Below, piece by piece: positions 15,276 to 48,800 of a stretch of 64,000 nt of DNA. The stretch comes from Asterias rubens (Eukaryota), in NCBI RefSeq assembly GCF_902459465.1, contig NC_047067.1, positions 4,092,001 through 4,156,000 on the forward strand, read 5' to 3'. The notes under the pieces are model-generated. The model saw only the letters and a program-made list of their open reading frames with translations, searched no databases and was not told the origin of the DNA. The translations under genes were made by a program, and so were the position numbers. Numbering within the stretch: position 1 is the stretch's first letter; each line of letters opens with the position of its first letter.

Positions 15276-15489
15276 GCTTGTCACCCATTAGGGAATGCAT
15301 GCCTATCAATGCCACCCTGTTGGGAATGCATGCCCTATACTCCCACCGTGAAGGGGGATGCATGTATGCCTATGTGTACTATTGCCGGCCTGTCCGGGAT
15401 GCCACCCTGTTGGGAATGCGGGCCTCAGTATTGTCACCGCGTTCGGAATGAAAGCCTAATGTTGCCCCCCCCCCCCGTTGAAAATGCAG

Positions 15490-15950
15490 GCCTAAAGTTG
15501 CCACCCTGTTGGTCAGGCCTAAAGTTGCCACCCTGTTGGTCAGGCCTAAAGTTGCCACCCTGTTGGTCAGGCTTAAAGTTGCCACCCTGTTGGTTAAGGC
15601 CTAAAGTTGCCACCCTGTTGGTCAGGCCTAAAGTTGCCACCCTGTTGGTCAGGCCTAAAGTTGCCACCCTGTTGGTCAGGCCTAAAGTTGCCACCCTGTT
15701 GGTCAGGCCTAAAGTTGCCACCCTGTTGGTTAAGGCCTAAAGTTGCCACCCTGTTGGTCAGGCCTAAAGTTGCCACCCTGTTGGTCAGGCCTAAAGTTGC
15801 CACCATGTTGGTCAGGCCTAAAGTTGCCACCATGTTGGTGAGGCCTAAAGTTGCCACCCTGTTGGTGAGGCCTGTTGCCACCATGTTGGCCAGGCCTATA
15901 GTTGCCACCGTGTTGGTTAAGGCCTAAAGTTGCCACCCTGTTGGAAATGC
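15490..15950. repeat. 27-bp tandem minisatellite, about 17 copies, with degenerate flanks (about 14860-16020)
   Basis: Unit CCTAAAGTTGCCACCCTGTTGGTCAGG; explains the repetitive ORFs on both strands. Confidence 0.95.
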
Positions 15951-25100: not shown

Positions 25101-28100
25101 TCAGTTACCAAGACCAAAAACACTTGAGCAGATCATTACGTACTGGTGTAACATGCGACTGTTACAAATACTGCTTCTTTTCATCTCCACTGACACAATT
25201 TGAGCACAATAAACCCGAGAGGTATTGCTCTTAAAGTTATTATTTAATCACTAACTCTCGTTAACTTTGATCTGATTACCGATGACGTTCCAATGCAATT
25301 TATCGCCAAATTCGGCATGTGTTAATACTAAGTATTACCTGAAAGGATTTAATAAGCACTATTAATTTTAATCCACGATTCTCTGAACGCCAATATTTAA
25401 CTAATCTGTTCTTATAAAATCTTTAGGCAAAACACAAAACCCAACCAAATCTGCAAGTAAAGAAAGCGGACATTCTTCCCATGGCAGCAGCAGTCATGAA
25501 GACCCTGACCATGTCAAACCGTAAGTTTCATTCATGCGACCACAAATATGGTAGATCTTTGTTTTTTCCCCCAACAAATAATAAGTAAAAAAACATGAAG
25601 GCCCTGTCTGTTTTTCTCAGCAAACCTTAAAGTTTAACATTTTTCTTAAATAACGAACTTGGATAGAACAGGTTAAGTAAACCCTGCATGTTAACTATTT
25701 TTGTAGGACGTTTTTCTAAGTAATAGGTTTTTTTCTCGAGCTGCTTTTGTTCCAATCACATCTCATTACATACGTAATATGTCATTTTCATTTGTTTTCT
25801 CTTTCAAAAGGTATAAGTAACTAACCAATGGTAGATGATTAATCCGAAAATCTATATTTCTTAACAGAAAATCAAATTCTGGAAGCAATGAAGTGCCAGG
25901 TAAGTGAATCAATACGATCTATAGGGGCTTTATCTTACCTATAATGTTGCTCATCTCAAGCCTCTTTAAATCACTGCATCAGTTATCGTTATTTTCTGAT
26001 AACAACGGCCAGTTGCTTTTCAAACTTGGCACCTGTATCCTCTTCTTAGTAGAATTGCTCAACCAAGCTGAGTTATACCTTGAAAACTTTAAGAAATTTT
26101 ATGTTTTACCATTCCAAGTTTCTCTGGACGTCATTATTGATCTATTCTGTTTGCACTTAAGCCTTAGGAGATACACAAAACCCAACCAAGTCTGCGAGTA
26201 AAGAGAACCGCCCCTCTTCCCCTGGCAGCAGCAGTCATACAGACCCTGATCACGTCAACTCGTAAGTTTCATTCACGCGACCACAAATTTGGTAGAACAT
26301 TATTGTTTTTCCAAAATGTGCTGAAACTTAAAGGCAAAAATGTTGCCTTGGTGTGCATTGTGACGGATAACGTGAACAATCTCTGCAGAAGTCTTGTTCC
26401 ATTTTAGTGAGTTTATCGAAAAAAAAAAAAATACAAATATTTAGGACCTATCTGTTTTTTTCTCAGCAGACCTTTAAGTTTGCCTTTTATTTAAATAACG
26501 AATTGGGATAAAAAAGCTTCAGAAAAGCCTGTTTGTAAACTATTTGTGTAGGTCGTTTATCAGTTTTTTTCTCGATCTATTTTTTTTTTCCCCATTTATA
26601 TCTCATTGTATAAGTAAACTGTCGTTTTCGTTAGATTTAATATAGCTTTGTCTTTCACAAGGTAAAGGTAAATTAACGAATGGTAGATGGTTAATAAAAA
26701 AAAATTGTTTCTTAACAGAAAACCAAGTTCTGAAAGCAATGAAGTACCAGGTAAGTGAATCATCACGATCTATAAAGGGGCCTTATCTTTCCTATAATGT
26801 TGCTCATCTCAAGCCTTTAGTTCTTGACATGACTCCATCGGTGATCGTAATTTGCTGATAACAACGGCAAGCTACTTTTCAAACTTGGTACCGTAGAGAA
26901 GTAATGCCTTATTATTTAACCACCAATTCTCACTTTCTTTCATGTGACTACCTTCAGATGAAATTCCCGCGCATTGTTTTCACCAAATTCAGCTTTTTTT
27001 TATTCCAAGTTATACCTTAAAGGATTTAAGCAATTTTTTGTTTCACTATTCCTAGTTTCTCTGGACGTCAGTATTGAATTATTCTGTTTGCATTTAAGCT
27101 TTAGGTGATACACACATTCCAACCAAGTCTGCAAGTAAAGAAAGCCGTCCCTCTTCCCCTGGCAGCAGCAGTCATAAAGACCCTGACCATGTCAACTCGT
27201 AAGTTTCATTCATTCGACCACATTTTGGTAGAATTTGTTTTTCTCCAGAATGTGCTGAAACTTAAAGCCAAGATGTTGCCTTGGTGTGCATTGTGACCGA
27301 TAACGTGAACAATCTATGCAGAAGTCTTCTTCCATTTTACTGAGTTTGTCGTATACAAAATATACGAAAAAATACAAAAAAATGTAGGCCCTATCTGTTT
27401 TTCTCAGCAGACCTTTGAGAGTAAGTTTTATTTAAATAACGAGTTGGGATAAAAAGCTTAAGAAAAGCCTGCATGTAACTTAGTTGTGTTGGTCGTTTGT
27501 CTTTTTTTTTAGCTACTTTTATTCAATTTACATCTCATTACATACGTAAACTGTCATTTTCCTTTTGTATTATAGCTTTGTCTTTCAAAAGGTATAAGTA
27601 ATTAACGATTGGTAGATGATCAATCCGTAAATCTATGTTTCTTAACAGAAAATCAGGTGATGAAAGCAATGAAGTGCCAGGTAAGTGAATCAATACAATC
27701 CATAGGGGCTTTATCTAGTTGCTCATCTCAAGCCTTTAGTTCTTGAAATCACTGCATCAGTGATCGTAATTATCTGATAACAACAGCAAACTTCTTTTCA
27801 AACTTGGCACCGGTATCCTCTTCTTAGTAGAATCTTAGTTTAGATTATTGCCCATGTATTTAAATTGTGTTATTTTTTCAGCACCTAATCCCCAGCCTTG
27901 CGATAGTCATCCATGCCAACATGGCGGTGTATGCCAAAATAAAGGACAATTATTTGAGTGTGTTTGCCCCAGTGGCTGCTCAGGAAGACGCTGTGAAAAT
28001 GGTAAGCATGTAAATATCAAACCGTCTTATATACACCTAAGTTTAAGATGTGAGTGATGTGAATTGATGGTTTTAGATATTGATTGATATTTCTGTTTAA

Positions 28101-31100
28101 TTTTGTCTTACATTAACTACAATGTATAGGACCTGTTCAAGACCCATGTGCGAATAACCCTTGCGAGCATGGGGGAGCATGTTCACCTTATGGATCCAGC
28201 TACCGATGCAGTTGCCCGTCAGCGTACATGGGTTCTAGATGCCAATTAGGTATTAATGATTTTTACTTGTTCGAGCGTAGTTACTTCTGAACTGTGGAAC
28301 ACCAACTCTATGTTTTGTTTCGCCGTTGTCAATCAGTTACCAAGACCAAAAACACTTGAGCAGATCATTACGTACTGGTGTAACATGCGACTGTTACAAA
28401 TACTGCTTCTTTTCATCTCCACTGACACAATTTGAGCACAATAAACCCGAGAGGTATTGCTCTTAAAGTTATTATTTAATCACTAACTCTCGTTAACTTT
28501 GATCTGATTACCGATGACATTCCAATGCAATTTATCACCAAATTCGGCATGTGTTAATACTAAGTATTACCTGAAAGGATTTAATAAGCACTATTAATTT
28601 TAATCCACGATTCTCTGAACGCCAATATTTAACTAATCTGTTCATATAAAATCTTTAGGCAAAACACAAAACCCAACCAAATCTGCAAGTAAAGAAAGCG
28701 GACATTCTTCCCATGGCAGCAGCAGTCATGAAGACCCTGACCATGTCAAACCGTAAGTTTCATTCATGCGACCACAAATATGGTAGATCGTTGTTTTTCC
28801 CCCCAACAAATAATAAATAAAAAAAACATGAAGGCCCTGTCTGTTTTTCTCAGCAAACCTTAAAGTTTAACATTTTTCTTAAATAACGAACTTGGATAGA
28901 ACAGGTTAAGTAAACCCTGCATGTTAACTATTTTTGTAGGACGTTTTTCTAAGTAATAGGTTTTTTTCTCGAGCTGCTTTTGTTCCAATCACATCTCATT
29001 ACATACGTAATATGTCATTTTCATTTGTTTTCTCTTTCAAAAGGTATAAGTAACTAACCAATGGTAGATGATTAATCCGAAAATCTATATTTCTTAACAG
29101 AAAATCAAATTCTGGAAGCAATGAAGTGCCAGGTAAGTGAATCAATACGATCTATAGGGGCTTTATCTTACCTATAATGTTGCTCATCTCAAGCCTCTTT
29201 AAATCACTGCATCAGTTATCGTTATTTTCTGATAACAACGGCCAGTTGCTTTTCAAACTTGGCACCTGTATCCTCTTCTTAGTAGAATTGCTCAACCAAG
29301 CTGAGTTATACCTTGAAAACTTTAAGAAATTTTATGTTTTACCATTCCAAGTTTCTCTGGACGTCATTATTGATCTATTCTGTTTGCACTTAAGCCTTAG
29401 GAGATACACAAAACCCAACCAAGTCTGCGAGTAAAGAGAACCGCCCCTCTTCCCCTGGCAGCAGCAGTCATACAGACCCTGATCACGTCAACTCGTAAGT
29501 TTCATTCACGCGACCACAAATTTGGTAGAACATTATTGTTTTTTCAAAATGTGCTGAAACTTAAAGGCAAAAATGTTGCCTTGGTGTGCATTGTGACGGA
29601 TAACGTGAACAATCTCTGCAGAAGTCTTGTTCCATTTTAGTGAGTTTATCGAAAAAAAAAAAATACAAATATTTAGGACCTATCTGTTTTTTTCTCAGCA
29701 GACCTTTAAGTTTGCCTTTTATTTAAATAACGAATTGGGATAAAAAAGCTTCAGAAAAGCCTGTTTGTAAACTATTTGTGTAGGTCGTTTATCAGTTTTT
29801 TTCTCGATCTATTTTTTTCCCCCATTTATATCTCATTGTATAAGTAAACTGTCGTTTTCGTTAGATTTAATATAGCTTTGTCTTTCACAAGGTAAAGGTA
29901 AATTAACGAATGGTAGATGGTTAATAAAAAAAAAATTGTTTCTTAACAGAAAACCAAGTTCTGAAAGCAATGAAGTGCCAGGTAAGTGAATCATCACGAT
30001 CTATAAAGGGGCCTTATCTTTCCTATAATGTTGCTCATCTCAAGCCTTTAGTTCTTGACATGACTCCATCGGTGATCGTAATTTGCTGATAACAACGGCA
30101 AGCTACTTTTCAAACTTGGTACCGTAGAGAAGTAATGCCTTATTATTTAACCACCAATTCTCACTTTCTTTCATGTGACTACCTTCAGATGAAATTCCCG
30201 CGCATTGTTTTCACCAAATTCAGCTTTTGTTTATTCCAAGTTATACCTTAAAGGATTTAAGCAATTTTTTGTTTCACTATTCCTAGTTTCTCTGGACGTC
30301 AGTATTGAATTATTCTGTTTGCATTTAAGCTTTAGGTGATACACACATTCCAACCAAGTCTGCAAGTAAAGAAAGCCGTCCCTCTTCCCCTGGCAGCAGC
30401 AGTCATAAAGACCCTGACCATGTCAACTCGTAAGTTTCATTCATTCGACCACATTTTGGTAGAATTTGTTTTTCTCCAGAATGTGCTGAAACTTAAAGCC
30501 AAGATGTTGCCTTGGTGTGCATTGTGACCGATAACGTGAACAATCTATGCAGAAGTCTTCTTCCATTTTACTGAGTTTGTCGTATACAAAATATACGAAA
30601 AAATACAAAAAAATGTAGGCCCTATCTGTTTTTCTCAGCAGACCTTTGAGAGTAAGTTTTATTTAAATAACGAGTTGGGATAAAAAGCTTAAGAAAAGCC
30701 TGCATGTAACTTAGTTGTGTTGGTCGTTTGTCTTTTTTTTAGCTACTTTTATTCAATTTACATCTCATTACATACGTAAACTGTCATTTTCCTTTTGTAT
30801 TATAGCTTTGTCTTTCAAAAGGTATAAGTAATTAACGATTGGTAGATGATCAATCCGTAAATCTATGTTTCTTAACAGAAAATCAGGTGATGAAAGCAAT
30901 GAAGTGCCAGGTAAGTGAATCAATACAATCCATAGGGGCTTTATCTAGTTGCTCATCTCAAGCCTTTAGTTCTTGAAATCACTGCATCAGTGATCGTAAT
31001 TATCTGATAACAACAGCAAACTTCTTTTCAAACTTGGCACCGGTATCCTCTTCTTAGTAGAATCTTAGTTTAGATTATTGCCCATGTATTTAAATTGTGT

Positions 31101-34100
31101 TATTTTTTCAGCACCTAATCCCCAGCCTTGCGATAGTCATCCATGCCAACATGGCGGTGTATGCCAAAATAAAGGACAATTATTTGAGTGTGTTTGCCCC
31201 AGTGGCTGCTCAGGAAGACGCTGTGAAAATGGTAAGCATGTAAATATCAAACCGTCTTATATACACCTAAGTTTAAGATGTGAGTGATGTGAATTGATGG
31301 TTTTAGATATTGATTGATATTTCTGTTTAATTTTGTCTTACATTAACTACAATGTATAGGACCTGTTCAAGACCCATGTGCGAATAACCCTTGCGAGCAT
31401 GGGGGAGCATGTTCACCTTATGGATCCAGCTACCGATGCAGTTGCCCGTCAGCGTACATGGGTTCTAGATGCCAATTAGGTATTATTGATTTTTACTTGT
31501 TCGAGCGTAGTTACTTCTGAACTGTGGAACACCAACTCTATGTTTTGTTTCGCCGTTGTCAATCAGTTACCAAGACCAAAAACACTTGAGCAGATCATTA
31601 CGTACTGGTGTAACATGCGACTGTTACAAATACTGCTTCTTTTCATCTCCACTGACACAATTTGAGCACAATAAACCCGAGAGGTATTGCTCTTAAAGTT
31701 ATTATTTAATCACTAACTCTCGTTAACTTTGATCTGATTACCGATGACATTCCAATGCAATTTATCGCCAAATTCGGCATGTGTTAATACTAAGTATTAC
31801 CTGAAAGGATTTAATAAGCACTATTAATTTTAATCCACGATTCTCTGAACGCCAATATTTAACTAATCTGTTCATATAAAATCTTTAGGCAAAACACAAA
31901 ACCCAACCAAATCTGCAAGTAAAGAAAGCGGACATTCTTCCCATGGCAGCAGCAGTCATGAAGACCCTGACCATGTCAAACCGTAAGTTTCATTCATGCG
32001 ACCACAAATATGGTAGATCTTTGTTTTTCCCCCCAACAAATAATAAATAAAAAAAACATGACGGCCCTGTCTGTTTTTCTCAGCAAACCTTAAAGTTTAA
32101 AATTTTTCTTAAATAACGAACTTGGATAGAACAGGTTAAGTAAACCCTGCATGTTAACTATTTTTGTAGGACGTTTTTCTAAGTAATAGGTTTTTTTCTC
32201 GAGCTGCTTTTGTTCCAATCACATCTCATTACATACGTAATATGTCATTTTCATTTGTTTTCTCTTTCAAAAGGTATAAGTAACTAACCAATGGTAGATG
32301 ATTAATCCGAAAATCTATATTTCTTAACAGAAAATCAAATTCTGGAAGCAATGAAGTGCCAGGTAAGTGAATCAATACGATCTATAGGGGCTTTATCTTA
32401 CCTATAATGTTGCTCATCTCAAGCCTCTTTAAATCACTGCATCAGTTATCGTTATTTTCTGATAACAACGGCCAGTTGCTTTTCAAACTTGGCACCTGTA
32501 TCCTCTTCTTAGTAGAATTGCTCAACCAAGCTGAGTTATACCTTGAAAACTTTAAGAAATTTTATGTTTTACCATTCCAAGTTTCTCTGGACGTCATTAT
32601 TGATCTATTCTGTTTGCACTTAAGCCTTAGGAGATACACAAAACCCAACCAAGTCTGCGAGTAAAGAGAACCGCCCCTCTTCCCCTGGCAGCAGCAGTCA
32701 TACAGACCCTGATCACGTCAACTCGTAAGTTTCATTCACGCGACCACAAATTTGGTAGAACATTATTGTTTTTCCAAAATGTGCTGAAACTTAAAGGCAA
32801 AAATGTTGCCTTGGTGTGCATTGTGACGGATAACGTGAACAATCTCTGCAGAAGTCTTGTTCCATTTTAGTGAGTTTATCGAAAAAAAAAAACCAATTCA
32901 AATATTTAGGACCTATCTGTTTTTTTCTCAGCAGACCTTTAAGTTTGCCTTTTATTTAAATAACGAATTGGGATAAAAAAGCTTCAGAAGAGCCTGTTTG
33001 TAAACTATTTGTGTAGGTCGTTTATCAGTTTTTTTCTCGATCTATTTTTTTTTTCCCCATTTATATCTCATTGTATAAGTAAACTGTCGTTTTCGTTAGA
33101 TTTAATATAGCTTTGTCTTTCACAAGGTAAAGGTAAATTAACGAATGGTAGATGGTTAATAAAAAAAAATTGTTTCTTAACAGAAAACCAAGTTCTGCAA
33201 GCAATGAAGTACCAGGTAAGTGAATCATCACGATCTATAAAGGGGCCTTATCTTTCCTATAATGTTGCTCATCTCAAGCCTTTAGTTCTTGACATGACTC
33301 CATCGGTGATCGTAATTTGCTGATAACAACGGCAAGCTACTTTTCAAACTTGGTACCGTAGAGAAGTAATGCCTTATTATTTAACCACCAATTCTCACTT
33401 TCTTTCATGTGACTACCTTCAGATGAAATTCCCGCGCATTGTTTTCACCAAATTCAGCTTTTTTTTATTCCAAGTTATACCTTAAAGGATTTAAGCAATT
33501 TTTTGATTCACAATTCCAAGTTTCTCTGGACGTCATTATTGAATTATTCTGTTTGCACTGAAGCTTTAGGTGATACACACATACCAACCAAGTCTGCAAG
33601 TAAAGAAAGGCGCCCCTCTTCCCCTGGCAGCAGCCCTGGCAGCAGCAGTCATACAGACCCTGACCACGCCAACTCGTAAGTTTCATTCACGCGACCACAA
33701 ATTTGGTAGAACATTCTTGTTTTTTAAGTTTAGGTTTTATTTAAATAACAAACTTGGCTAGAAAAGCTTAAGAAAAACCTGCATGTGAAGTATTTGTGAA
33801 GATCGTTTTTCATTTTTTGGTTTTCAAGCTACTATCATTTACGTAAACTGTCACGATTGGTAGATGATTAATCCGAAAATCTATGTTTCTTCACAGAAAA
33901 TCAAATTCTGGAAGCAATGAAGTGCCAGGTAAGTGAATCAATACGATCTATAGGGGCTTTATATTACCAATAATGTTGCTCATCTCAAGCCTTTAGTTTT
34001 TTATGTTATGTTTTACCATTCCAAGTTTTTCTGACGTCATTATTGATCTATTCTGTTTGCACTTAAGCTTTAGGAGATACACAAAACCCAACCAAGTCTG

Positions 34101-36777
34101 CGAGTAAAGAGAACCGCCCCTCTTCCCCTGGCAGCAGCAGTCATACAGACCCTGACCACGTCAACTCGTAAGTTTCATTCACGCGACCACAAATTTGGTA
34201 GAACATTATTGTTTTTCCAAAATGTGCTGAAACTTAAAGGCAAAAATGTTGCCTTGGTGTGCATTGTGACGGATAACGTGAACAATCTCTGCAGAAGTCT
34301 TGTTCCATTTTACTGAATTTATCGACTAAAAAAAGAAAATACAAATATTTAGGACCTATCTGTTTTTTTCTCAGCAGACCTTTCAGTTTACCTTTTATTT
34401 AAATAACGAATTGGGATAAAAAAGCTTTAGAAGAGCCTGTTTGTAAACTATTTGTGTAGGTCGTTTATCAGTTTTTTTCTCGATCTATTTTTGTTTCCAT
34501 TTATATCTCATTGTATAAGTAAACTGTCGTTTTCGTTAGATATATTAAAGCTTTGTCTTTCACAAGGTAAAGGTAAATTAACGAATGGTAGATGGTTAAT
34601 AAAAAAAAATATATGTTTCTTAACAGAAAACCAAGTTCTGAAAGCAATGAAGTGCCAGGTAAGTGAATCATCACGATCTCTTTAGGGGCCTTATCTTTCC
34701 TGTAATGTTGCTCATCTCAAGCCTTTAGTTCTTGACATGACTGCATCGGTGATCGTAATTTGCTGATAACAACGGCAAGCTTCTTTTTAAACTTGGTACC
34801 GTAGAGAAGTAATGCCCTTTAAAGATATTATTTAACCACCAATTCTCACTTTCTTTCATGTGACTGTACCTTTATATAAAATTCCCGCGCATTGTTTTCA
34901 CCAAATTCAGCTTGTGATTGTTCCAAGTTATACCTTGAAGGATTTAAGCAATTTTATGTTTTACTATTCCTAGTTTCTCTGGACGTCAGTATTGAATTAT
35001 TCTGTTTACATTTAAGCTTTAGGAGATACACACATTCCAACCAAGTATGCGAGTAAAGAGAGCCGCCCCTCTTCCCCTGGCAGCAGCAGTCATAAAGACC
35101 CTGACCACGTCAACTCGTAAGTTTCATTCACGCGACCACAAATTCGGTAGAACATTATTGGATTTAAAAATGTGCCGAAACTTAAAGGCAAACATGTTGC
35201 TTTAGTGTGCATTGTGACGGATAACGTGAACAATCTATGCAGAAGTCTTCTTCCGTTTTACAGAGTTTAGCGACTAAGAAAAACAAAAAGTAAGTTTAAC
35301 TTTTATTTAAATAACGAATTGGGATAGAAAAGCTTAAGAAAAGCCTGTTTGTAAACCATTTACATCTCATTATATAGTATATACGTATAAAACTGTCATT
35401 TTCGTTTGCTGTTGTAGCTTTGTCTTTCACAAGGTAAAGGTAAATTAACGAATGGTAGATGGTTAATAAAAATAAATCTGTGTTTCTTAACAGAAAACCA
35501 AGTTCTGCAAGCAATGAAGTGCCAGGTAAGTGAATCATCACGATCTCTATAGGGGCCTTATCTTTCCTATAATGTTGCTCATCTCAAGCCTTTAGTTCTT
35601 GACATGACTCCATCGGTGATCGTAATTTGCTGATAACAACGGCAAGCTACTTTTCAAACTTGGTACCGTAGAGAAGTAATGCCTTATTATTTAACCACCA
35701 ATTCTCACTTTCTTTCATGTGACTACCTTCAGATGAAATTCCCGCGCATTGTTTTCACCAAATTCAGCTTTTTTTTATTCCAAGTTATACCTTAAAGGAT
35801 TTAAGCAATTTTGTAATTTACCATTCCAAGTTTCTCTGGACGTCATTATTGAATTATTCTGTTTGCATTTAAGCTTTAGGTGATACACAAAACCCAACCA
35901 AGTCTGCGAGTAAAGAGAACCGCCCCTCTTCCCCTGGCAGCAGCAGTCATACAGACCCTGACCACGTCAACTCGTAAGTTTCATTCACGCGACCACAAAT
36001 TTGGTAGAACATTATTGTTTTTCCAAAATGTGCTGAAATTTAAAGGCAAAAATGTTGCCTTGGTGTGCATTGTGACGGATAACGTGAACAATCTATGCAG
36101 AAGTCTTCTTCCATTTTACTGAGTTTGTCGTATACAAAACATACAAAAAAATACAAAAAATGTAGGCCCTATCTGTTTTTCTCAGCAGACCTTTAAGTGT
36201 AAGATTTATTTAAATAACGAGTTGGAATAAAAAGCTTAAGAAAAGCCTGCATGGAAACTAGTTGTGTAGGTCGTTTGTCAGGTTTTTTTTAGAGCTACTT
36301 TTGTTCAATTTACATCTCATTACATACGTAAACTGTCATTTTCATTTTGTATTATAGCTTTGTCTTTCAAAAGGTATAAGTAATTAACGATTGGTAGATG
36401 ATCAATCCGTAAATCTATGTTTCTTAACAGAAAATCAAGTGATGAAAGCAATGAAGTGCCAGGTAAGTGAATTAATACAATCCATAGGGGCTTTATCTAG
36501 TTGCTCATCTCAAGCCTTTAGTTCTTGAAATCACTGCATCAGTGATCGTAATTATCTGATAACAACAGCAAACTTCTTTTCAAACTTGGCACCGGTATCC
36601 TCTTCTTAGTAGAATCTTAGTTTAGATTTTTGATCATGTTTTTAAATTGTTTTTTTTTCAGCACCTAAACCTCAGCCTTGCGATAGTCATCCATGCCAAC
36701 ATGGCGGTGTATGCCAAAATAAAGGACAATTATTTGAGTGTGTTTGCTCCAGTGGCTGCTCAGGAAGACGCTGTGAA

Positions 36778-36810
<33 letters not shown>

Positions 36811-39800
36811 AACTTATAAAGCGCACAAATCCATCAAAGTGCTCATGGCGCTAAATACAAAGAATAATATTGACATGTACAATAACCAAAATTGAAACGT
36901 AAGCCTAAGCTAAGAAGAAATCAAGATCATGTTGAAGAGAAAATACAGTACAAATGCAATATCAAAGAAAACATCGAAGGGTAGAAATCAAACCATTTTC
37001 TCAAATACTTGGTTGAAAAGATGTGTCTTAAGGTTTTTCTTAAATTGTGTTAAAGAAACAGATGATTTTACTAGTGCTGGCAATTTGTTCCAAAGGCGTG
37101 GGGCAGCATGTGAGAAAGATCGGTCTCCCCATGAATGATTGGATATGGGCTCAATAAGGAGACTAGAATTGTAAGACCGGAGTTTGCGAGGAGGATTGTA
37201 TGGTTTGAGTAGATCATCAATATATGCAGGGGCATTGTTGGTGAGTGATTTATACACAAAAAGCAGAAGTTTATACTTGACTCTACTGCTTACGGGTAAC
37301 CAGTGTAATTCTTTCAAAATCGGAGTTATATGACAGGACTTTTTATTTAAGGTGATAACACGAGCAGCATAGTTCTGAATACGCTGAAGTCGTTCAATTT
37401 GAGTATTAGGAAGACCATATAGAAGTGAGTTACACATGTCAATTCTGGAAACGACGACGGAGTGGACTATTTGCTCAGTTGCTTTTTGTGTTAAATATTT
37501 CCTCACTTTGCCTATATTACGAATGTGAAATGTTGTAGAACGTGCAATACTAGAAATATGTGAATAAGTGTCATGGAAGAGTCGAAGATCACACCAAGAT
37601 TACGAGCTTTGGTAACAGCGGTAACTTCGGAGTCACCTATATTAATATGGGGAATAGTAACTTTAGAGAGTTGTTGGCGTGAACCAATTATCATAAATTC
37701 AGTCTTGTTATCATTAAGTTTAAGGAAATTGTCTTGCATCCAAACACGAATTTCACCAACACACGTTTCAATACGACTGATGCTCTCATCAGCAAAATGT
37801 TTGGATGGTATAAAAGAGAAATACAACTGAGTGTCATCAGCATATACATGATAGTTCAGTTTGTGTTTCAGGATGATGCTATGAACTGGGTAGGTGTACA
37901 CCGTGAACCACAGCGGTCCAAGAACCGACCCCTGAGGGACTGAACAATCATGAACAACTGGGTCCGATGTGGAATTGCCAATGCGTACATGTTGTGGTCT
38001 GTTTTGCAAATAGGATTGGCACCATTTAAGGGCATTGCCCTGTAAACCAATAATATCACGTAGTCTCTTGAGCAAAATAGTGTGATCCACGGTGTCAAAA
38101 GCCGCACTTAAATCAAGCAGAATCAGGGCAGTCACATGGCCTTCATCCATAGCACATAAAATGTCATTTTGCACCCGTAATAGTGCCGATTCAGTGCTAT
38201 GCTTGGACCTGTATGCTGATTGAAATTTATCAGCAAGGCCAGAGTCAGAGATAACAGTATTCAATCTGGAGGCGACTATGCGCTCAATGGTCTTGCCAAC
38301 AAACTTCAAATTAGCCACCGGTCTGTAGTTAGAAAAAGTCTCAATATCTAAACCTGGCTTCTTGATTAGGGGACGAATGTAAGCAGTCTTAAGACTGTCT
38401 GGAAAATTACCTTGTTCAAAGGACTTGTTCACAATAGTAGTAATAAGAGGTGCTAGAACATTAATACACCTTTTAAGAAGATGTGTAGGTATGGGGTCCA
38501 GTTCACATGATTTAGAAGGAGAACTGCTTATTAATTTTATAATCTCAGACACAGTAGCAGATTCAAACTGGGAAATTTTTGTTACATGAGCACACACAGG
38601 TAAATGGTTAATCTGCGATACAGTAGAACTAGTTGCTACAGGAAAAATACTACGAATATTAACAATTTTGTTGCTGAAATAGTTAGAAAAACTATCTGCC
38701 AGAACCGCATCTGATACACTACTGGGTAATACAGGCTTTTCCTTTGTTTGATTTAGTAACCCATCAACAACTTTAAATAGTTTCTTCTGATCTCCTGAAC
38801 AATCTGTAATTTGAGAGGAGTAATATTCAATCTTAGCTACATTAATTAATTCATTAACCCTTTGTCTTTGATTACAATACAACTGTCTATCAATCTCAAG
38901 TCTTGAGTGCCTCCATTTTCTCTCATGAACTCTGCGCAGCTTTCTAGCAGTCTGTATAGCATCATTAAACCAAGGACTATGAGGTCTCAAACGAACAGAT
39001 CTAGTGCGAGCTGGTGCATGCTTGTTCAAAAGACTACTAAGGATAACCTCATAATTTTGCACACAAGAGTCGAGATCGGTAGAAGTCATATCAAAGTCGG
39101 AGAGTAACACAACCAGATCATTGCGGAAAACATCAACATCAATAGACTTAATGTTACGTGTTGTAATAATAACTTTAGGGGGTTGTGGTTTCTAAAGTGA
39201 TAATTGAGACATAACAGCAAAGTGATCAGATAATCCAGGATGAAGATAAATACCAGAAACAAGTGTAGCATTTTCACGAGTTATGAGTAGGTCAAGCAAA
39301 TCCCCATGTATGTGCGTTGATCCTGAGACATGCTGATGAAGACCATAGGATTGTAATATGGTCTTAAACCGGATGGCGTTGGTATCATTTAAATTATCCA
39401 TATGAATGTTAAAATCACCCCCCAAAAAAAAATGGTAAGCATGTAATTATACACACCCAAGTTTAAGATGTGAGTGATGTGAATTGATGGTTTTAGATAT
39501 TGATTGATATTTCTGTTTAATTTTGTCTTACATTAACTGCAATGTATAGGACCTGTTCAAGACCCATGTGCGAATAACCCTTGCGAGCATGGGGGAGCAT
39601 GTTCACCTTATGGATCCAGCTACCGATGCAGTTGCCCGTCAGCGTACATGGGTTCTAGATGCCAATTAGGTATTAATGATTTTTACTTGTTCGAGCGTAG
39701 TTACTTCTGAACTGTGGAACACCAACTCTATGTTTTGTTTCGCCGTTGTCAATCAGTTATTTAAGACAAAAACACTTGAGCAGATCATTACGTACTGGTG

Positions 39801-42800
39801 TAACATGCGACTGTTACAAATACTGCTTCTTTTCATCTCCACTGACACAATTTGAGCACAATAAACCCGAGAGGTATTGCTCTTAAAGTTATTATTTAAT
39901 CACTAACTCTCGTTAACTTTGATCTGATTACCGATGACATTCCAATGCATGTTATCAACCAATTCGGCATGTGTTAATACCAAGTATTACCTGAAAGGAT
40001 TTAATAAGCAATATTTATATTAATCCACGATTCTCTGAACGCCAATATTTAATTAATCTGTTCATATTAAATCTTTAGGCAAAACACAAAACCCAACCAA
40101 GTCTGCAAGTAAAGAAAGCGGCCCCTCTTCCCATGGCAGCAGTAGTCATGAAGACCCTGACCATGTCGAACCGTAAGTTTCATTCATGCGACCACAGATA
40201 TGCAGGTAGATCTTTGTTTTTTTCCCCCAACAAATAATAAAAAAAAAACATGAAGGCCTTATCTGTTTTTCTCAGCAAACCTTAAAGTTTAAGATTTCTT
40301 TTAATAACGAACTTAAATAGAAAGGTTAAGTAAAGCCTGCATGTTAACTATTTTTGTAGAACGTTTGTATAAGTAATGTTTTTTTTATCTCAAGCTGCTT
40401 TTGTTCCAATCACATCTCATTACATACGTAATATGTCATTTTTATTTGTTTTCTCTTTCAAAAGGTATAAGTAACTAACCAATGGTAGATGATTAATCCG
40501 AAAATCTATATTTCTTAACAGAAAATCAAAATCTGGAAGCAATGAAGTGCCAGGTAAGTGAATCAATACGATCTATAGGGGCTTTATCTTACAAATAATG
40601 TTGCTCATCTCAAGCCTTTAGTTTGTTTTATGTTATGTTTTACCATTCCAAGTTTCTCTGGACGTCATTATTGAATTATTCTGTTTGCACTTAAGCTTTA
40701 GGTGATACACACATACCAACCAAGTCTGCAAGTAAAGAAAGGCGCCCCTCTTCCCCTGGCAGCAGCCCTGGCAGCAGCAGTCATAAAGACCATGACCACG
40801 CCAACTCGTAAGTTTCATTCACGCGACCACAAATTTGGTTGAACATTCTTGTTTTTTAAGTTTAGGTTTTATTTAAATAACAAACTTGGCTAGAAAAGCT
40901 TAAGAAAAACCTGCATGTGAAGTATTTGTGAAGATCGTTTTTCATTTTTTGGTTTTCAAGCTACTATCATTTACGTAAACTGTCACGATTAGTAGATGAT
41001 TAATCCGAAAATCTATGTTTCTTAACAGAAAATCAAATTCTGGAAGCAATGAAGTGCCAGGTAAGTGAATCAATACGATCTATAGGGGCTTTATCTTACC
41101 AATAATGTTGCTCATCTCAAGCCTTTAGTTTTTTTAAGTTATGTTTTACCATTCCAAGTTTTTCTGGACGTCATTATTGATCTATTCTGTTTGCACTTAA
41201 GCTTTAGGAGATACACAAAACCCAACCAAGTCTGCAAGTAAAGAAAGCCGTCACTCTTCCCCTGGCAGCAGCAGTCATACAGACCCTGACCACGTCAACT
41301 CGTAAGTTTCATTCACGCGACGACAAATTTGGTAGAACATTATTGTTTTTCCAAAATGTGCTGAAACTTAAAGGCAAAAATGTTGCCTTGGTGTGCATTG
41401 TGACGGATAACGTGAACAATCTCTGCAGAAGTCTTGTTCCATTTTACTGAGTTTATCGACAAAAAAAAATACACAAATATTTAGGACCTATCTGTTTTTT
41501 TCTCAGCAGACCTTTAAGTTTACCTTTTATTTAAATAACGAATTGGGATAAAAAAGCTTAAGAAGAGCCTGTTTGTAAACTATTTGTGTAGGTCGTTCAT
41601 CAGTTTTTTTCTCGATCTATTTTTTTTCCCCCATTTATATCTCATTGTCGTTTTCGTTAGATTTAATACAGCTTTGTCTTACACAAGGTAAAGGTAAATT
41701 AACGAATGGTAGATGGTTAATAAAAAAAAATATATGTTTCTTAACAGAAAACCAAGTTCTGAAAGCAATGAAGTGCCAGGTAAGTGAATCATCACGATCT
41801 CTATAGGGGCCTTATCTTACCTATAATGTTGCTCATCTCAAGCCTTTAGTTCTTGACATGACTCCATCGGTGATCGTAATTTGCTGATAACAACGGCAAG
41901 CTACTTTTCAAACTTGGTACCGTAGAGAAGTAATGCCTTATTATTTAACCACCAATTCTCACTTTCTTTCATGTGACTACCTTCAGATGAAATTCCCGCG
42001 CATTGTTTTCACCAAATTCAGCTTTTTTTTATTCCAAGTTATACCTTAAAGGATTTAAGCAATTTTTTGATTCACCATTCCAAGTTTCTCTGGACGTCAT
42101 TATTGAATTATTCTGTTTGCATTTAAGCTTTAGGTGATACACAAAACCCAACCAAGTCTGCAAGTAAAGAGAACCGCCCCTCTTCCCCTGGCAGCAGCAG
42201 TCATACAGACCCTGACCACGTCAACTCGTAAGTTTCATTCACGCGACCACAACTTTGGTAAAACATTATTGTTTTTCCAAAATGTGCTGAAACTTAAAGG
42301 CAAAAATGTTGCCTTGGTGTGCATTGTGACGGATAACGTGAACAATCTATGCAGAAGTCTTCTTCCATTTTACTGAGTTTGTCGTATACAAAACATACAA
42401 AAAAATACAAAAAATGTAGGCCCTATCTGTTTTTCTCAGCAGACCTTTAAGCGTAAGATTTATTTAAATAACGAGTTGGAATAAAAAGCTAAAGAAAAGC
42501 CTGCATGGAAACTAGTTGTGTAGGTCGTTTGTCAGTTTTTTTTTAGAGCTACTTTTGTTCAATTTACATCTTATTACATACGTAAACTGTCATTTTCATT
42601 TTGTATTATAGCTTTGTCTTTCAAAAGGTATAAGTAATTAACGATTGGTAGATGATCAATCCGTAAATCTATGTTTCTTAACAGAAAATCAAGTGATGAA
42701 AGCAATGAAGTGCCAGGTAAGTGAATTAATACAATCCATAGGGGCTTTATCTAGTTGCTCATCTCAAGCCTTTAGTTCTTGAAATCACTGCATCGGTGAT

Positions 42801-45800
42801 CGTTATTTTCTGATAACAACAGCAAACTTCTTTTCAAACTTGGCACCGGTATCCTCTTCTTAGTAGAATCTTAGTTTAGATTTTTGATCATGTTTTTAAA
42901 TTGTTTTTTTTTCAGCACCTAAACCTCAGCCTTGCGATAGTCATCCATGCCAACATGGCGGTGTATGCCAAAATAAAGGACAATTATTTGAGTGTGTTTG
43001 CCCCAGTGGCTGCTCAGGAAGACGCTGTGAAAATGGTAAGCATGTAATATCAAACCGTCTTATATACACCTAAGTTTAAGATGTGAGTGATGTGAATTGA
43101 TGGTTTTAGATATTGATTGATATTTCTGTTTAATTTTGTCTTACATTAACTACAATGTATAGGACCTGTTCAAGACCCATGTGCGAATAACCCTTGCGAG
43201 CATGGGGGAGCATGTTCACCTTATGGATCCAGCTACCGATGCAGTTGCCCGTCAGCGTACATGGGTTCTAGATGCCAATTAGGTATCAATGATTTTTACT
43301 TGTTCGAGCGTAGTTACTTCTGAACTGTGGACCACCAATTTTATGTTTTGTTTGGTCTTTGTCAATCAGTTATCAAGACCAAAAGTACAATTGAGCAGAT
43401 CATTACGCACTGGTGTAACATGCGACTGTTACAAATACTGCTTCTTTTCATCTCCACTGACACAATTTGAGCACAATAAACCCGAGAGGTATTGCTCTTA
43501 AAGTTATTATTTAATCACTAACTCTCGTTAACTTTGATCTGATTACCGATGACATTCCAATGCAATTTATCACCAAATTCGGCATATGTTAATACCAAGT
43601 ATTACCTGAAAGGATTTAATAAGCACTATTAATTTTAATCCACGATTCTCTGAACGCCAATATTTAACTAATCTGTTCATATAAAATCTTTAGGCAAAAC
43701 ACAAAACCCAACCAAATCTGCAAGTAAAGAAAGCGGACATTCTTCCCATGGCAGCAGTAGTCATGAAGACCCTGACCATGTCAAACCGTAAGTTTCATTC
43801 ATGCAACCACAAATATGGTAGATCTTTGTTTTTTCCCCCAACTAAAATAAATAAAAAACATGAAGGCCTTATCTGTTTTTCTCAGCAAACCTTAAAGTTT
43901 AAGATTTCTTTAAATTACGAACTTGGATAGAACAGGTTAGTTTTTTTTTCTCAAGCTGCTTTTGTTCCAATCACATCTCATTACATACGTAATATGTCAT
44001 TTTCATTTGTTTTCTCTTTCAAAATGTATAAGTAACTAACGAATTGTAGATGATTAATCCGAAAATCTATATTTCTTAACAGAAAATCAAATTCTGGAAG
44101 CAATGAAGTGCCAGGTAAGTGAATCAATACGATCTTTAGGGGCCTTATCTTACCTATGTTGCTCATCTCAAGCCTTTAGTTCTTTAAATCACTGCATCAG
44201 TTATCGTTATCTTCTGATAACAACGGCCAGTTGCTTTTCAAACTTGGCACCTGTATCCTCTTCTTAGTAGAATTGCTCAACCAAGCTGAGTTATACCTTG
44301 AAAACTTTAAGAAATTTTATGTTTTACCATTCCAAGTTTCTCTGGACGTCATTATTGATCTATTCTGTTTGCACTTAAGCCTTAGGAGATACACAAAACC
44401 CAACCAAGTCTGCGAGTAAAGAGAACCGCCCCTCTTCCCCTGGCAGCAGCAGTCATACAGACCCTGATCACGTCAACTCGTAAGTTTCATTCATTCGACC
44501 ACATTTTTGTAGAATTTGTTTTTCTCCAGAATGTGCTGAAACTTAAAGTCAAGATGTTGCCTTGGTGTGCATTGTGACCGATAACGTGAACAATCTATGC
44601 AGAAGTCTTCTTCCATTTTAGTTATTTTGTTAATTTAAGAAGAAAAAAGAAGAAAAACAAAAGAAGAAGACCATTATCTCTTTTTCTCCGCAGATCTTTA
44701 AGTCTAACTTTTATTTAAATAACGAACTTGAGATTAAAACCAAACCAATCAAAGCCAACTTTTCCAGTTTGCTTTCTTATTTAATCCAATATAATGGACC
44801 CGGATCAAAATCTTCGCGATCTGGCAGTCGTGAGCACTTTCCAAAAAAGTTAGTTTAGCGAACAAAACCACCAGCATTTACTGCTTGTGATAACTAAACA
44901 TTTCGCAGACACGTTTAATATTTGTACTCTCAAAAACTTCCAAAAGGTTTGTATTAGTTGGAATTAAAGTATAATAACTTGTGCAGTCTCTCGACGGGAA
45001 CGTTGAGGTTGTTTTATTTAGTGTCTCTGCCATAAATGTTTTTTGTTTTAACACTGTACTCCTTTCCAGACATGCATCAGGAAGTAAATCAGGGAGTGGT
45101 TCAGGGCGTGGCTCAGGCAGTAACGAAAGAAGAGGTAATTAAGAATGGATTTATTGTAAATACTATAATCAAAACAACTTACTACAAAGGAAGACAAACT
45201 ATCAATGCAAACATACTCTTCGGTGGGTGTGTACTAAGACAAATTACTGGAGCAAGATTTGAACTAACGACCTCCTCGTTAACGTGTTCAACCAACTATG
45301 AGCTACACAGCGAAAACAACAACAGTTTGACCAACGTTTTGACCAACCATAGCTTTACTGATATTGCGATGCCGTTGAGAACAAACTTTTTTGTTTAATT
45401 GTATTTTAAAAAATGGTGGCTAGGAAGGTAAAATCTATATATGTTATAGCAGTTGGCAATATTATCTGTACCACCGTTAGTCCGGAGGTCGTTGGTTCAA
45501 ATCCCACTCTTCTCAATTAGAATTGTCTTTGTTCAACAACAAATTTACTAAAATTAACCCTTCCAGCTTCCCTTTGGGTTTATTACTTGGGTTAACAGGA
45601 ATACGTTGCCTTGGATCGGACGAGTTGATCTATAAAAAGCGTATGAAACCGTTTGTTATGAAGGGGGGGGGGGGAGATGTTTTAAAAGTAGAATATAATG
45701 ATCCACACAAGTAGCACTCGAAATTGCACGGTTTTCATTTTACGTCACGAACTAACACGGTCGGCCATTTATGGGAGTCAAAAATTGGCCGACCGTGTTC

Positions 45801-48800
45801 GTCGACGAGGTAAACAGAAACCACGCAATTTCGAGGCATATTTTTGTAGATCATTGTATTCTACTTTTACAACATCTTTCTACCCATATGCATTTTATAA
45901 CAAAAGGTTACAGAACGTTTTTCAAAGACCGACAAGACCGATCCAAGGCAACGTGTTCCTTAAAGATTATTCTAAACAAATGTAAAGATACTCATCCTTA
46001 AGATTTCAAACATGAACAGTTGAACATCCAAACACAGGTAGATACATTACTAGTAAATACCAATAAAATAAATTAAATATTAGATACTACTTTTCAATAA
46101 TTCAGTAATCTTAACCGTTGACTTTTCCTTAAAAATTAATGTTAAAAAATTGTTAAAAGTTTGTGTTGTTCTATTTACCAGGCTACTACAGAAGTCCGTG
46201 TGAGAAAAACCCTTGCAAACGGGGATCTTGCAAAGAGTTCGGCAAAACATTCAAGTGCAAATGTCCAAGTGGCTTCAAAGGAAGACGCTGCCAATACAGT
46301 AAGTATGCCTATTTGTATTGAACAACATTTGCGTGCGAACGGGAAAAAAAAATCTGCGTGCGAACGAAACAAATTTGCGTGCATTTGTAAGTCTGATTCA
46401 GTGTCGTTGTGGAAAGCAGGAAGATACAATATTTCCACGAAAGAAGTTTTAAAGTCCCTCCGTTATCTGTATTCAGAAATCTTAACAGTATTGTTTTCCT
46501 TCTTATTCCCTCGAAGCAAAAAGACCACGCACAACTCATACCCATGGGAGCAAATCGAGCGGGTAAATATTGTCCTCTGTGTAATTTCCCCCAATGTAGT
46601 TTTATAAAGTCTTCGCTATTGGTTTGCATTTATTGATTTTAGACATAATTGATCGTTTTAATGTTATAACCTTTGAGTTTTTCCCCTCCCCATGTGAAAC
46701 AGACATTTACACCGTTTCATTAAATAATACGTATAATACAATTCAATGTAAGAGGTTATTGTATTTGTAGTAACCTTACAGTTTTACAAACTTGCTCATC
46801 TAAATATGCGAAATTTAAAAAAATTGATGGAGGGGGGGCTTTTATTAATTTTCTCTGTAACAACAATAATGATTTACTTTCCTCTTTTTAAACAGCTCGT
46901 CGTCTTCTGCAGAAATCGAAGGTAAGTGAATAATTCGCTTGCTTCTAGATAATAATAACAATATACATTAATGACAATATTGTTAATATTGTTATTATTG
47001 TTATAAATTTATCAAATTTTGGGCACCACAGCAGTGTATGTGCATGAGCTAATAAAGGATAACACGTGATATGTGGTCAACCAATCAAATGACAACGAAG
47101 ACCTACCAGGTACATTTCAATTGTTAACGTATTTCCGAGCGTGTGCACAATACCGAGAACAATGGATTTTACCTGGTAAGTCTGCTGCCACCAAGCGTTC
47201 CAAAAGTCTCTCAATCAGATAATGCTGACAATAGTATTAATATGATGTAGTAAGATTTGTGTTTGTTTGCATGTTATAGCACCCCAACCATGTGATTACA
47301 ACCCATGTTGGAACGGAGGAACCTGTTTGCCCGAGGGTGACCCGTATACCTGTAATTGCGCACCAGGATATGAAGGAAGACGTTGTGAAATTGGTAAGAA
47401 TTTTGCAGTTATTATTTCCATACCCTGTTTCACTTGCTGAAACATTTGAAAACGATTGAAAAACACTTCAGTTTACTGCTCAAATTTTTGAATATGATGG
47501 TTATAAATAATCAATAGTTTTGAAGTTACCCCTACATTTGATTTCCCCACACTATGGGGACAGTTGTTTGTCAAGTGGTTCGGGACAAGCTTTTGTACAG
47601 CAACCTCCACATGAGCAATCCCTGGTGCCACTGTGCCATACACATTCATTCAAAATTGTGTGTAGTTGTTCACCGTCTCTTACGTTACTAAAAGCTTGCC
47701 CCAAATCATGTGACATAGCAACTGTTTCTGTAGCCGGAGGAATTCGAATTTAAACAGTAACTTGTGAACAAGCACGTCATTGTACCAGACAAACGGGAGG
47801 TTTAGCTGCAATCAATTGAAAGTAATTTCCTAATATTCAAATCCAATTGTGTATAGCTCTTGTTTTCAGAGCTCTTGCTATTTCTTTTACTATTAATGGT
47901 AACACCACCAGTGGTTATTGCTTTAGTTGACTGCATTTTGTTTATTTATTTTTTTTTTTGTTTAACTACTGTAGCTCCCACACCTCATCCATGTGAACAA
48001 GACCCTTGCTCTGGCCACGGTAAATGCTACTCGACCCGGGACGGAGGATACAGGTGTGAATGTGATCCTAATTACGGGGGTGAACGTTGCAATGAAGGTA
48101 AGGGCACGAACAAACAAACAGGCACCACCACCCCCGCCCCCCCCCCCCAACAAATGGTCTTCCAAAAACGTCGACTTGTTGTTTTTTGTTGTTGTTTTTT
48201 AATTGATGTAGGAAGTAAAATGTCATCAGAGGCATATTTTCACACATTTACAACATCCATATTACATGTGACATTGCTCACAACAACAATTAATGCATAA
48301 CTGTTACATAAATATATTTTTCGTTCAAGTGATGTTAAACTCTGTACACCAATCATTCAATATTAACAACAGAATGCACATGAGCTACAATAACGTACGT
48401 AAACAACAAAACAACTTTGAAGGAAAAGAAAATAAACCTGTTGGGCAATTCAAAATGTACCTGCTATTTGCTTTGTTCATTATCTCCCTGGTTTTAGGGT
48501 TTGCGTAGTGTTGTCTTCCCATGCCTTTCTCCTCTATAGGATCACTATTCAAAACACGTCGTGGGTTGGGTTTTCAGTCATTACCTGACAACGTTGGTTT
48601 TTTTTTCTTTCTTTTTCTTAAATATATGTATATATATATATAATGAATAGGGTAGATGGCCTTAGCTTTCGATCCAATCCGGACCTTCTTCAGAGGCATA
48701 AAACAAGTACAAACAAATACATATCCATTTATAGAAAAAGAGAGGGGGAAGGGATTAAGGAAAGGATCCAGAAAGAAGCGGGAAAAATAACAGCCAATCA

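What the first reader, a model, noticed from the sequence alone, without database searches (positions are those of the whole stretch)
36662..39440. LINE inserted one base before a splice donor, knocking out one repeat exon
The L2 element's (ATT)n tail joins the exon's ...GAAAAT and the stranded G|GTAAGC reappears at 39434, with AAAAT on both sides. This suggests target priming on AAT microhomology. Inclusion of the exon hits TAA at 36817 before any GT. Because the exon is phase 1-1 and 120 nt, skipping it preserves the frame, so the modular design may buffer the hit. The exon has a private P>S change and the orphan donor intron has a 13-bp deletion, consistent with relaxed selection. The alternative is a truncated secreted isoform lacking FAMeT domains.
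Basis: partly seen in the sequence, partly recalled or inferred. Interest (0 to 1): 0.75.

Follow-up and report, generated by a model that had tools for sequence, protein, structure and literature searches.

The report
LINE insertion splits one EGF exon
A young jumping gene (a LINE) landed one base before the end of one repeat exon of a large, expressed sea-star secreted-protein gene; this is a well-known kind of mutation, and public RNA data could not show its effect on the message.

Summary
A 2,653-bp insert (36781-39433) separates a 119-nt EGF exon (36662-36780) from its last base and donor (G|GTAAGC, 39434). Five paralogous units in the window keep the uninterrupted site GTGAAAATGGTAAGC.

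The insert is a 5'-truncated non-LTR retrotransposon on the minus strand. It has a reverse transcriptase, an endonuclease tail fragment, an (ATT)n tail, a 5-bp target-site duplication (AAAAT) and 9 filler bases. It differs by about 0.5% from the abundant family majority, so it is young. "L2" was not tested; earlier notes of this scan describe a young CR1/L2-like LINE elsewhere in this genome.

The frame logic is right:
- Skipping the exon keeps a 54-exon frame open.
- Inclusion meets TAA at 36817, before any GT.

The gene is an EGF-linker-FAMeT array, a candidate Asterias rubens footprint protein. Exons on both sides of the insert appear in spliced public RNA, including letters private to this unit downstream.

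Neither the skip junction (36462>39550) nor read-through into the LINE was seen. The insertion state of the RNA donor animals is unknown. The exon's acceptor is strong and near; the next exon's is weak and 3 kb away. A GTAAGC cryptic donor lies 118 nt into the insert. Clean buffering is therefore unproven.

This is an ordinary kind of event and a tidy example of it.

The parts
36431..36462 (+). 32-nt linker mini-exon upstream; its donor (36463) must choose between the acceptors at 36661 and 39549
   Evidence: Exon map and open frame. RNA joints 35973>36431 and 36462>36662.
36662..36780 (+). Body of the disrupted EGF-A exon (119 of 120 nt). It carries the private T at 36748 (Pro>Ser at a Pro kept in all five paralogs).
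36776..36780 (.). Left copy of the target-site duplication AAAAT
36781..36807 (-). (ATT)n tail of the LINE, read as (AAT)9 on the + strand
36817..36819 (+). In-frame TAA met if the exon is read into the insert
36899..36904 (+). First strong cryptic donor, AAC|GTAAGC. It has the same hexamer as the native donor and would make a 237-nt, phase-preserving exon that contains the stop.
36808..39419 (-). Body of the 5'-truncated non-LTR retrotransposon: 3' UTR, C-terminal ORF piece 36988-37506, RT ORF 37512-39110, endonuclease end 39192-39419. It has one frameshift near 37510-37565 and one stop near 39190.
   Evidence: other copies continue 5' beyond 39419, and the family majority has one more letter at 37564.
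39420..39428 (.). 9 filler bases (CCCCAAAAA on +) at the 5' junction, absent from both the LINE family and the target
   Evidence: X2 loose end at 39419.
39429..39433 (.). Right copy of the target-site duplication AAAAT
39434..39440 (+). Stranded last exon base G plus the orphan donor GTAAGC
39435..39549 (+). Orphan intron with a private 12-13-bp deletion after 39446 and private substitutions at 39452, 39458 and 39539
39550..39669 (+). EGF-B exon, intact and identical to three paralogs. Its acceptor is weak (9/18 pyrimidines).
   Evidence: RNA joint 39669>40079.
40079..40172 (+). Next linker exon with five letters private to this unit. The private form is present in RNA run X15.
   Evidence: at 40122 the window's own letter C takes about 141 of 439 depth.
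40522..40553 (+). Mini-exon with a letter unique in the window (AAAATCAAAATCTGG), seen spliced to 40172 in RNA run X15

Best explanation
A young copy of an abundant CR1/L2-type LINE, 5'-truncated, inserted by target-primed reverse transcription. It lies antisense to the gene, inside the last codon of one EGF-A exon of a multi-exon EGF-linker-FAMeT secreted-protein gene.

Inferred mechanism:
- The endonuclease nicked the gene's sense strand after ...GAAAAT.
- That 3' end paired with the (AUU)n RNA tail and primed cDNA synthesis.
- The second nick, 5 nt away, gave the AAAAT duplication.
- The 5' end was joined with 9 filler bases.

Shown result: the exon now lies 2,653 nt from its donor and cannot be included productively.

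Inferred outcome: I think a mixture is most likely on chromosomes that carry the insert.
- The strong, nearby acceptor still recruits the exon. It is then joined through cryptic donors such as 36899, or through retention, into stop-containing RNAs that are degraded.
- A fraction of transcripts skip the exon in frame and encode a protein with five rather than six EGF-A modules.
- Transcription runs through the antisense LINE, so the downstream exons stay expressed.

The element is so young that the insertion may well be polymorphic.
For: Insertion anatomy and empty sites:
- Searches show the junctions and the five uninterrupted paralog sites.
- Searches show the RT and endonuclease domains on the minus strand.
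- One search shows other copies continuing 5' in frame beyond 39419 (truncation).
- One search also shows family word depth of 160-6400 with a 3'>5' gradient.
- This copy differs from the majority contigs at about 11 substitutions and 1 indel in about 2.3 kb.

Frame logic.

Splice-site layout:
- The A* acceptor has a 10-pyrimidine run 199 nt from the upstream donor.
- The B acceptor has 9/18 pyrimidines and lies 3,087 nt away.
- The cryptic donor GTAAGC is at 36899.
- The insert has only one ATTAAA on the gene strand.

Expression: canonical joints appear in RNA on both sides. Letters private to this unit (40122 C and the mini-exon at 40522) appear in spliced RNA.

Gene integrity:
- 54 exons with AG/GT borders and no stop.
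- FAMeT exons differ from those of the upstream paralog at 24 synonymous and 21 non-synonymous codons out of 312, roughly dN/dS 0.3.
Against: - No RNA contig or read showed a cryptic-exon product or read-through. The depth in bins over 36879-36943 is fully explained by contigs from other loci.
- No skip junction was listed either.
- The tool masked 36770-36816, so the junction itself could not be read.
- The RNA animals may simply lack the insert.
- RNA contigs of the major paralog type could in part come from the upstream paralogous gene, whose array lies outside the window.
- No independent DNA sample was shown to span either junction.
Confidence: 0.55

Rival explanations
1. Clean modular buffering. 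Without a donor the exon is no longer defined. It is skipped essentially always, so the allele makes a normal amount of protein lacking one EGF-A module.
For: - The exon is 120 nt and phase 1-1, and skipping keeps the frame open.
- The number of linker modules already varies between units, so the protein tolerates variation in module number.
- Downstream exons private to this unit are present in RNA at about per-unit depth.
- From general knowledge, loss of a donor commonly causes exon skipping in vertebrates.
Against: - No 36462>39550 joint in X15, X18 or X29.
- Strong proximal acceptor against a weak distal one, plus a good cryptic donor 118 nt inside the insert.
- The short flanking introns (199 and 128 nt) favour intron definition.
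- No unit in the window has EGF-B without EGF-A.
Confidence: 0.3
2. Truncated secreted isoform. The exon is included, translation ends at TAA 36817 (...[15 protein letters not shown]), and a stable short protein without the C-terminal EGF and FAMeT domains is produced.
For: - The stop lies 12 codons into the insert.
- The literature reports a short complete ORF (Sfp4b, 334 aa) and an unresolved long one (Sfp4a) at one A. rubens locus (PMC9382459). Identity with this gene was not tested.
Against: - No RNA contig covers 36879-36943.
- The only poly(A) hexamer in the insert lies 2.1 kb downstream, so such an RNA would be spliced further and be a target for decay.
- A search with the read-through peptide found no protein.
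- The exon lies more than 1,000 codons into the gene, too far for a 334-aa product unless repeats were collapsed in assembly.
Confidence: 0.07
3. Gene B is a dead copy, so the insertion has no consequence.
For: - A paralogous gene lies just upstream.
- RNA contigs of the major type cannot be assigned to one gene.
Against: - 54 array exons are open with canonical splice sites.
- Letters private to this unit are found in spliced RNA.
- An RNA contig links the last array exon to exon 45070.
- The FAMeT exons show purifying selection.
Confidence: 0.05
4. Assembly artefact: a LINE-containing read was wrongly joined into the array.
For: - The array is 97-99% repetitive and hard to assemble.
- No independent DNA contig was shown to bridge a junction.
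Against: - A mis-join does not create a 5-bp duplication of the target, a tail abutting the nick site and a precise empty site in the paralogs.
- Both flanks carry letters private to this unit.
Confidence: 0.03

Closest known systems
Disease-causing L1 insertions into or next to exons in human genes that cause exon skipping (for example dystrophin and factor VIII cases; from general knowledge)
   Same: A 5'-truncated LINE with a target-site duplication lies inside an exon. The exon is made unusable, and an in-frame skip is a possible outcome.
   Different: - The element here is a CR1/L2-type LINE with an (ATT)n tail instead of poly(A).
- The host is a sea star.
- The hit is in one of six near-identical repeat exons.
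- No transcript evidence of the outcome was obtained.
Stringent-type LINEs with 3' microsatellite tails (UnaL2/ZfL2 of the L2 clade, CR1; from general knowledge)
   Same: - An endonuclease plus RT element.
- A short tandem repeat as tail.
- The tail abuts a target end with matching letters, as expected if the tail repeats pair with the nicked DNA.
   Different: - The RT was not placed on a tree.
- There is no match to any Rfam family, including the UnaL2 3' element.
- The tail unit is ATT, not TGTAA.
Sea star footprint proteins Sfp3/Sfp4a/Sfp4b of Asterias rubens (PMC9382459)
   Same: - Repetitive EGF domains with FAMeT domains.
- A Ser/Gly-rich part.
- Several such genes clustered at one chromosomal location.
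- An ORF left unresolved because of multiple predicted splice variants.
   Different: The chromosome and the tissue of expression were not checked here.

Membership tests
Non-LTR retrotransposon (LINE) insertion made by target-primed reverse transcription | Reverse transcriptase of the LINE type | tested here: met
   RVT_1, E 2.2e-32, minus strand 37512-39110.
Non-LTR retrotransposon (LINE) insertion made by target-primed reverse transcription | AP-type endonuclease upstream of the RT | tested here: met
   Only the C-terminal end is left. Exo_endo_phos_2 scores 23.4 bits, below the 27.4 cut-off, E 5.6e-5. Other copies continue in frame through ...VFVGDFN.
Non-LTR retrotransposon (LINE) insertion made by target-primed reverse transcription | Target-site duplication and an identifiable empty site | tested here: met
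   AAAAT on both sides. Five paralogs have the uninterrupted site. Chance about 0.0013.
Non-LTR retrotransposon (LINE) insertion made by target-primed reverse transcription | 3' tail at the primed end, with variable 5' truncation | tested here: met
   (ATT)n tail at 36781-36807. Truncation at 39419, with family depth falling from the 3' end to the 5' end.
L2 clade of LINEs | RT groups with L2 reference elements on a tree | not tested
   No reference LINE library was available. The conserved C-terminal motif (...LHWLPV...GDRSF..AAP.LWN.LP) resembles L2 elements only from memory.
L2 clade of LINEs | Conserved 3' stem-loop of the UnaL2 type | tested here: not met
   No Rfam match at E<=1 over 36600-39600. 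The fold of the 3' end is no better than shuffles (z = 0.91). This feature is not required of every L2 family.
Transposon-induced in-frame exon skipping | The exon is frame-symmetric, so its loss keeps the frame | tested here: met
   120 nt, phase 1-1. The 3,990-nt model without it has no stop.
Transposon-induced in-frame exon skipping | The skip junction is present in RNA of carrier animals | tested here: inconclusive
   No 36462>39550 joint in X15, X18 or X29. Contigs drop rare forms, the raw run had 1-3 reads per exon, and the genotype of the animals is unknown.
Sea star footprint protein Sfp4 (A. rubens) | Repetitive EGF modules plus FAMeT domains in a secreted protein | tested here: met
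   EGF exons. PF12248 hits on exons 55580-55975 and 58008-58322. The signal peptide was not checked.
Sea star footprint protein Sfp4 (A. rubens) | Sequence identity with OP067639/OP067640 | not testable with these tools
   Protein searches did not return the gene's own product. The supplements are not held. Peptide strings were not found in the paper library.

The most novel reading that the evidence does not exclude
The insertion is a segregating allele of a sea-star adhesive (footprint) protein gene. Carriers make an in-frame protein lacking one EGF module. This would be a natural test of whether single modules of a repeat-built adhesive are dispensable. In addition, the 2.65-kb heterology may locally shield the adjoining sequence from the homogenisation that keeps the other units alike. 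That would explain the excess of private changes just downstream of the insert.
Probability: 0.2. Interest if true: 0.4.

Novelty: new member of a known kind. Interest (0 to 1): 0.25.

Why it matters
It is a clean, datable example of target-primed insertion by a microsatellite-tailed LINE, with the empty site preserved five times next to it. That makes the junction anatomy (nick site, 5-bp duplication, 9-base filler, tail microhomology) unusually easy to read.

If the gene is indeed a tube-foot adhesive protein, the allele could serve as a natural knock-down or module-deletion variant. Beyond that, exon disruption by a LINE and possible exon skipping are textbook phenomena.

Tried and rejected
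1. Read evidence. The single read-laying run masked 36770-36816 and gave only 1-3 raw RNA reads per exon. The junction and the skip could therefore not be decided. DNA run X2 gave no contig that demonstrably bridges 39434.

2. The gene's own annotated product.
- A whole-library HMMER search with a FAMeT exon returned only relatives of 46% identity or less.
- A word-index search with the read-through peptide found no candidate.
- Spliced queries could not be given by reference, so Sfp4 identity and annotated isoforms stayed untested.

3. Two scans of metagenome contigs, one for the unit-specific intron and one for the 5' junction, found nothing.

4. The paper's supplements are not held. Peptide strings are absent from the paper library.

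5. Rfam and folding of the LINE 3' end found nothing.

6. I considered that the LINE marks a sharp boundary of homogenisation and rejected the strong form. The high-identity tract with the next unit (98.7%, from 35485) continues about 290 nt past the insert.

7. 'Relaxed selection' on the exon was rejected as untestable. One change in 119 nt equals the local neutral divergence.
Full report
**What is there**

The + strand from about 19 kb to 59 kb carries one large modular gene.

- A mechanical scan found 120-nt, phase 1-1 EGF exons of two types. Type A reads [39 protein letters not shown]. Type B reads [39 protein letters not shown]. They occur as pairs at 22360, 24650, 27882, 31112 and 42916.
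- At 39550 there is a B exon whose A partner is missing from the scan.
- Between the pairs lie alternating 94-nt (twice 106-nt) and 32-nt exons. Together they encode Ser/His/Pro-rich linkers of 42 residues.
- The higher-order unit is about 3.2 kb. Three units are 98.6-99.4% identical.
- A model of 54 exons from 21388 to 44479 has AG/GT at every border and no stop codon.
- Downstream follow unique EGF exons (46182-50856) and exons matching the FAMeT domain PF12248.
- The 3' end of a paralogous gene, with the same FAMeT exons, lies at 3017-6536. The two genes differ there at 24 synonymous and 21 non-synonymous codons out of 312, roughly dN/dS 0.3.

**The observation**

- The sixth A exon starts normally at 36662 after a long pyrimidine run and reads ...CSGRRCEN. 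After ...GAAAAT (36780) it runs into (AAT)9 and 2.6 kb of foreign sequence.
- The exon's last base and its donor, G|GTAAGC, reappear at 39434.
- The left flank (36300-36780) and the right flank (from 39430) each align to the same five intact units, and the two alignments overlap by four bases.
- All five intact units read GTGAAAATGGTAAGC. The insert is therefore 36781-39433, and AAAAT is duplicated on both sides. The chance of such a match is about 0.0013.
- Read into the insert, the frame gives ten Asn, then Glu-Asn-Leu, then TAA at 36817. The first GT comes only at 36839.
- The exon differs from all five paralogs only by T at 36748 (Pro>Ser). The Pro belongs to a C-x-C-P-S-G motif kept in every paralog.
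- The orphan intron has a private 12-13-bp deletion and three private substitutions.

**What the insert is**

- On the minus strand it encodes a reverse transcriptase (RVT_1, E 2e-32) and a further conserved C-terminal ORF piece.
- At its 5' end it keeps only the last part of an AP-type endonuclease.
- It ends in (ATT)n. It has one frameshift and one stop.
- In a DNA run, contigs of the same family continue past 39419 in frame (...[11 protein letters not shown]). This copy is therefore 5'-truncated at 39419. The nine bases 39420-39428 are filler, belonging neither to the element nor to the target.
- The family's word depth is 160-6400 with a 3'>5' gradient. Flanking array sequence is at about 35-100.
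- The majority contigs differ from this copy at about 11 substitutions and one indel in about 2.3 kb, or 0.5%. This is a young copy of an abundant family.
- Family contigs also appear in the RNA libraries.
- The window holds no second copy.
- The architecture and the microsatellite tail fit the CR1/L2 group. Earlier notes of this scan describe a young CR1/L2-like LINE elsewhere in this genome.
- I could not place the RT on a tree. No Rfam family, including the UnaL2 3' element, matches. 'L2' therefore remains a label, not a result.

**How it got there (inferred)**

The element's sense strand is the window's minus strand. The first cDNA strand is therefore the window's + strand, primed by the nicked end ...GTGAAAAT-3'. 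This agrees with what is known of LINEs with repeat tails. The second nick, five bases away, explains the duplication. The truncated cDNA was joined with nine untemplated bases.

**What it does to the message**

Shown:

- The exon can no longer be included productively.
- Skipping it keeps the frame.
- On the gene strand the insert has a single poly(A) hexamer, ATTAAA at 38964. Transcription can therefore run through it.
- The array's canonical junctions are present in public RNA: 35973>36431, 36462>36662 and 39669>40079.
- One RNA contig links the last array exon to the Ser/Gly-rich exon at 45070.
- Downstream of the insert, letters private to this unit are found in RNA run X15. The window's own C at 40122 takes about 141 of 439 depth. 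The mini-exon variant AAAATCAAAATCTGG is exact only at 40522 and is seen spliced to 40172.
- 'Not transcribed past this point' is therefore not supported.

Not shown:

- The RNA contigs over exon A carry the three letters of the major paralog type (36669, 36672, 36748), so they come from other units.
- No 36462>39550 junction was listed.
- The depth in the bins over 36879-36943 is fully accounted for by contigs from other loci. Neither a cryptic exon nor read-through is visible.
- The tool masked 36770-36816, and contigs drop rare forms.
- The raw run had one to three reads per exon.
- Nothing tells whether these animals carry the insert. With an element this young, polymorphism is a real possibility.

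**Which outcome is likelier**

- The disrupted exon keeps a strong acceptor, a 10-pyrimidine run 199 nt from the upstream donor.
- The B acceptor, which a skip must use, has 9 of 18 pyrimidines and lies 3,087 nt away.
- A cryptic donor, AAC|GTAAGC, has the native hexamer and the native phase. It lies 118 nt into the insert, beyond the stop.
- The normal flanking introns are short (199 and 128 nt). From general knowledge, short introns favour cryptic-site use or retention over skipping.
- I therefore expect a mixture: stop-containing RNAs that are degraded, plus some in-frame skipped mRNA. Clean buffering is a serious rival. A stable truncated isoform is unlikely.

**Relaxed selection**

- One exon change in 119 nt equals the local divergence from the nearest unit (1.3%), so it says nothing by itself.
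- The orphan intron does carry an excess of private events: 4 in 115 nt against 2 in 901 nt upstream (P about 1e-4).
- The whole 739 nt to the right of the insert has 22 private events against 2 on the left (P about 2e-6).
- This excess extends into the next linker exon, whose private form is present in RNA. Relaxed constraint on an unused donor is therefore not the only reading.
- Escape from homogenisation next to a large heterology, or a mosaic origin of the unit, fits as well.
- The high-identity tract shared with the next unit (35485 onwards, 98.7%) continues about 290 nt beyond the insert. The LINE is not a sharp boundary.

**Identity of the gene**

- Earlier notes of this scan name the genome as Asterias rubens. 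I did not verify this.
- In that species, the footprint proteins Sfp3, Sfp4a and Sfp4b combine repetitive EGF domains with FAMeT domains or Ser/Gly-rich parts. They sit together on chromosome 6, are expressed in type-1 adhesive gland cells, and have unresolved ORFs because of multiple predicted splice variants (PMC9382459).
- The architecture found here fits, but sequence identity could not be tested.

**Verdict**

- The proposed buffering by exon skipping is plausible but unsupported by the data reachable here. The splice-site layout weakens it somewhat.
- This kind of event is well known. It is of modest interest unless carriers are shown to make a module-deleted adhesive protein.

Noticed in passing
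window 24286-33711: Three consecutive 3.23-kb units are 98.6-99.4% identical, introns included. The units at 22 kb, 36 kb and 42 kb are 92-94% identical to them. This looks like a young core of tandem duplications inside an older array.
   Followed up: partly
window 35485-36780 plus 39434-39725, against 41670-43330: A tract of about 1.6 kb (with the LINE removed) is 98.7% identical between the disrupted unit and the next unit. It is flanked by 5-15% divergence, which suggests recent gene conversion or duplication. The next unit lacks the LINE.
   Followed up: partly
window 33570-33675 and 40702-40807: Two linker exons are 106 nt instead of 94 nt because of an in-frame 12-nt repeat (an extra SSPG). 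The number of linker modules between EGF pairs varies from 3 to 7, so module number is not fixed.
   Followed up: no
window 3017-6536 against 53505-58322: The FAMeT-domain exons of an upstream paralogous gene are about 94% identical to those of this gene, with roughly equal counts of synonymous and non-synonymous codon changes (24 and 21). This indicates a tandem gene duplication under purifying selection.
   Followed up: partly
window 15487-15944: A 27-bp minisatellite of 17 copies at 93% identity is open in several frames on both strands. It lies in a GC-richer stretch between the two genes.
   Followed up: no
window 36817-36861: Words from the LINE 3' end reach high depth in RNA run X15 on a contig that diverges after 36861. 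A related element's 3' end seems to be embedded in some abundant transcript elsewhere.
   Followed up: no
window 45070-45134: A 65-nt Ser/Gly-rich exon ([21 protein letters not shown]) joins the array to the unique EGF exons. An RNA contig in run X18 supports the junction from the last 94-nt exon.
   Followed up: partly
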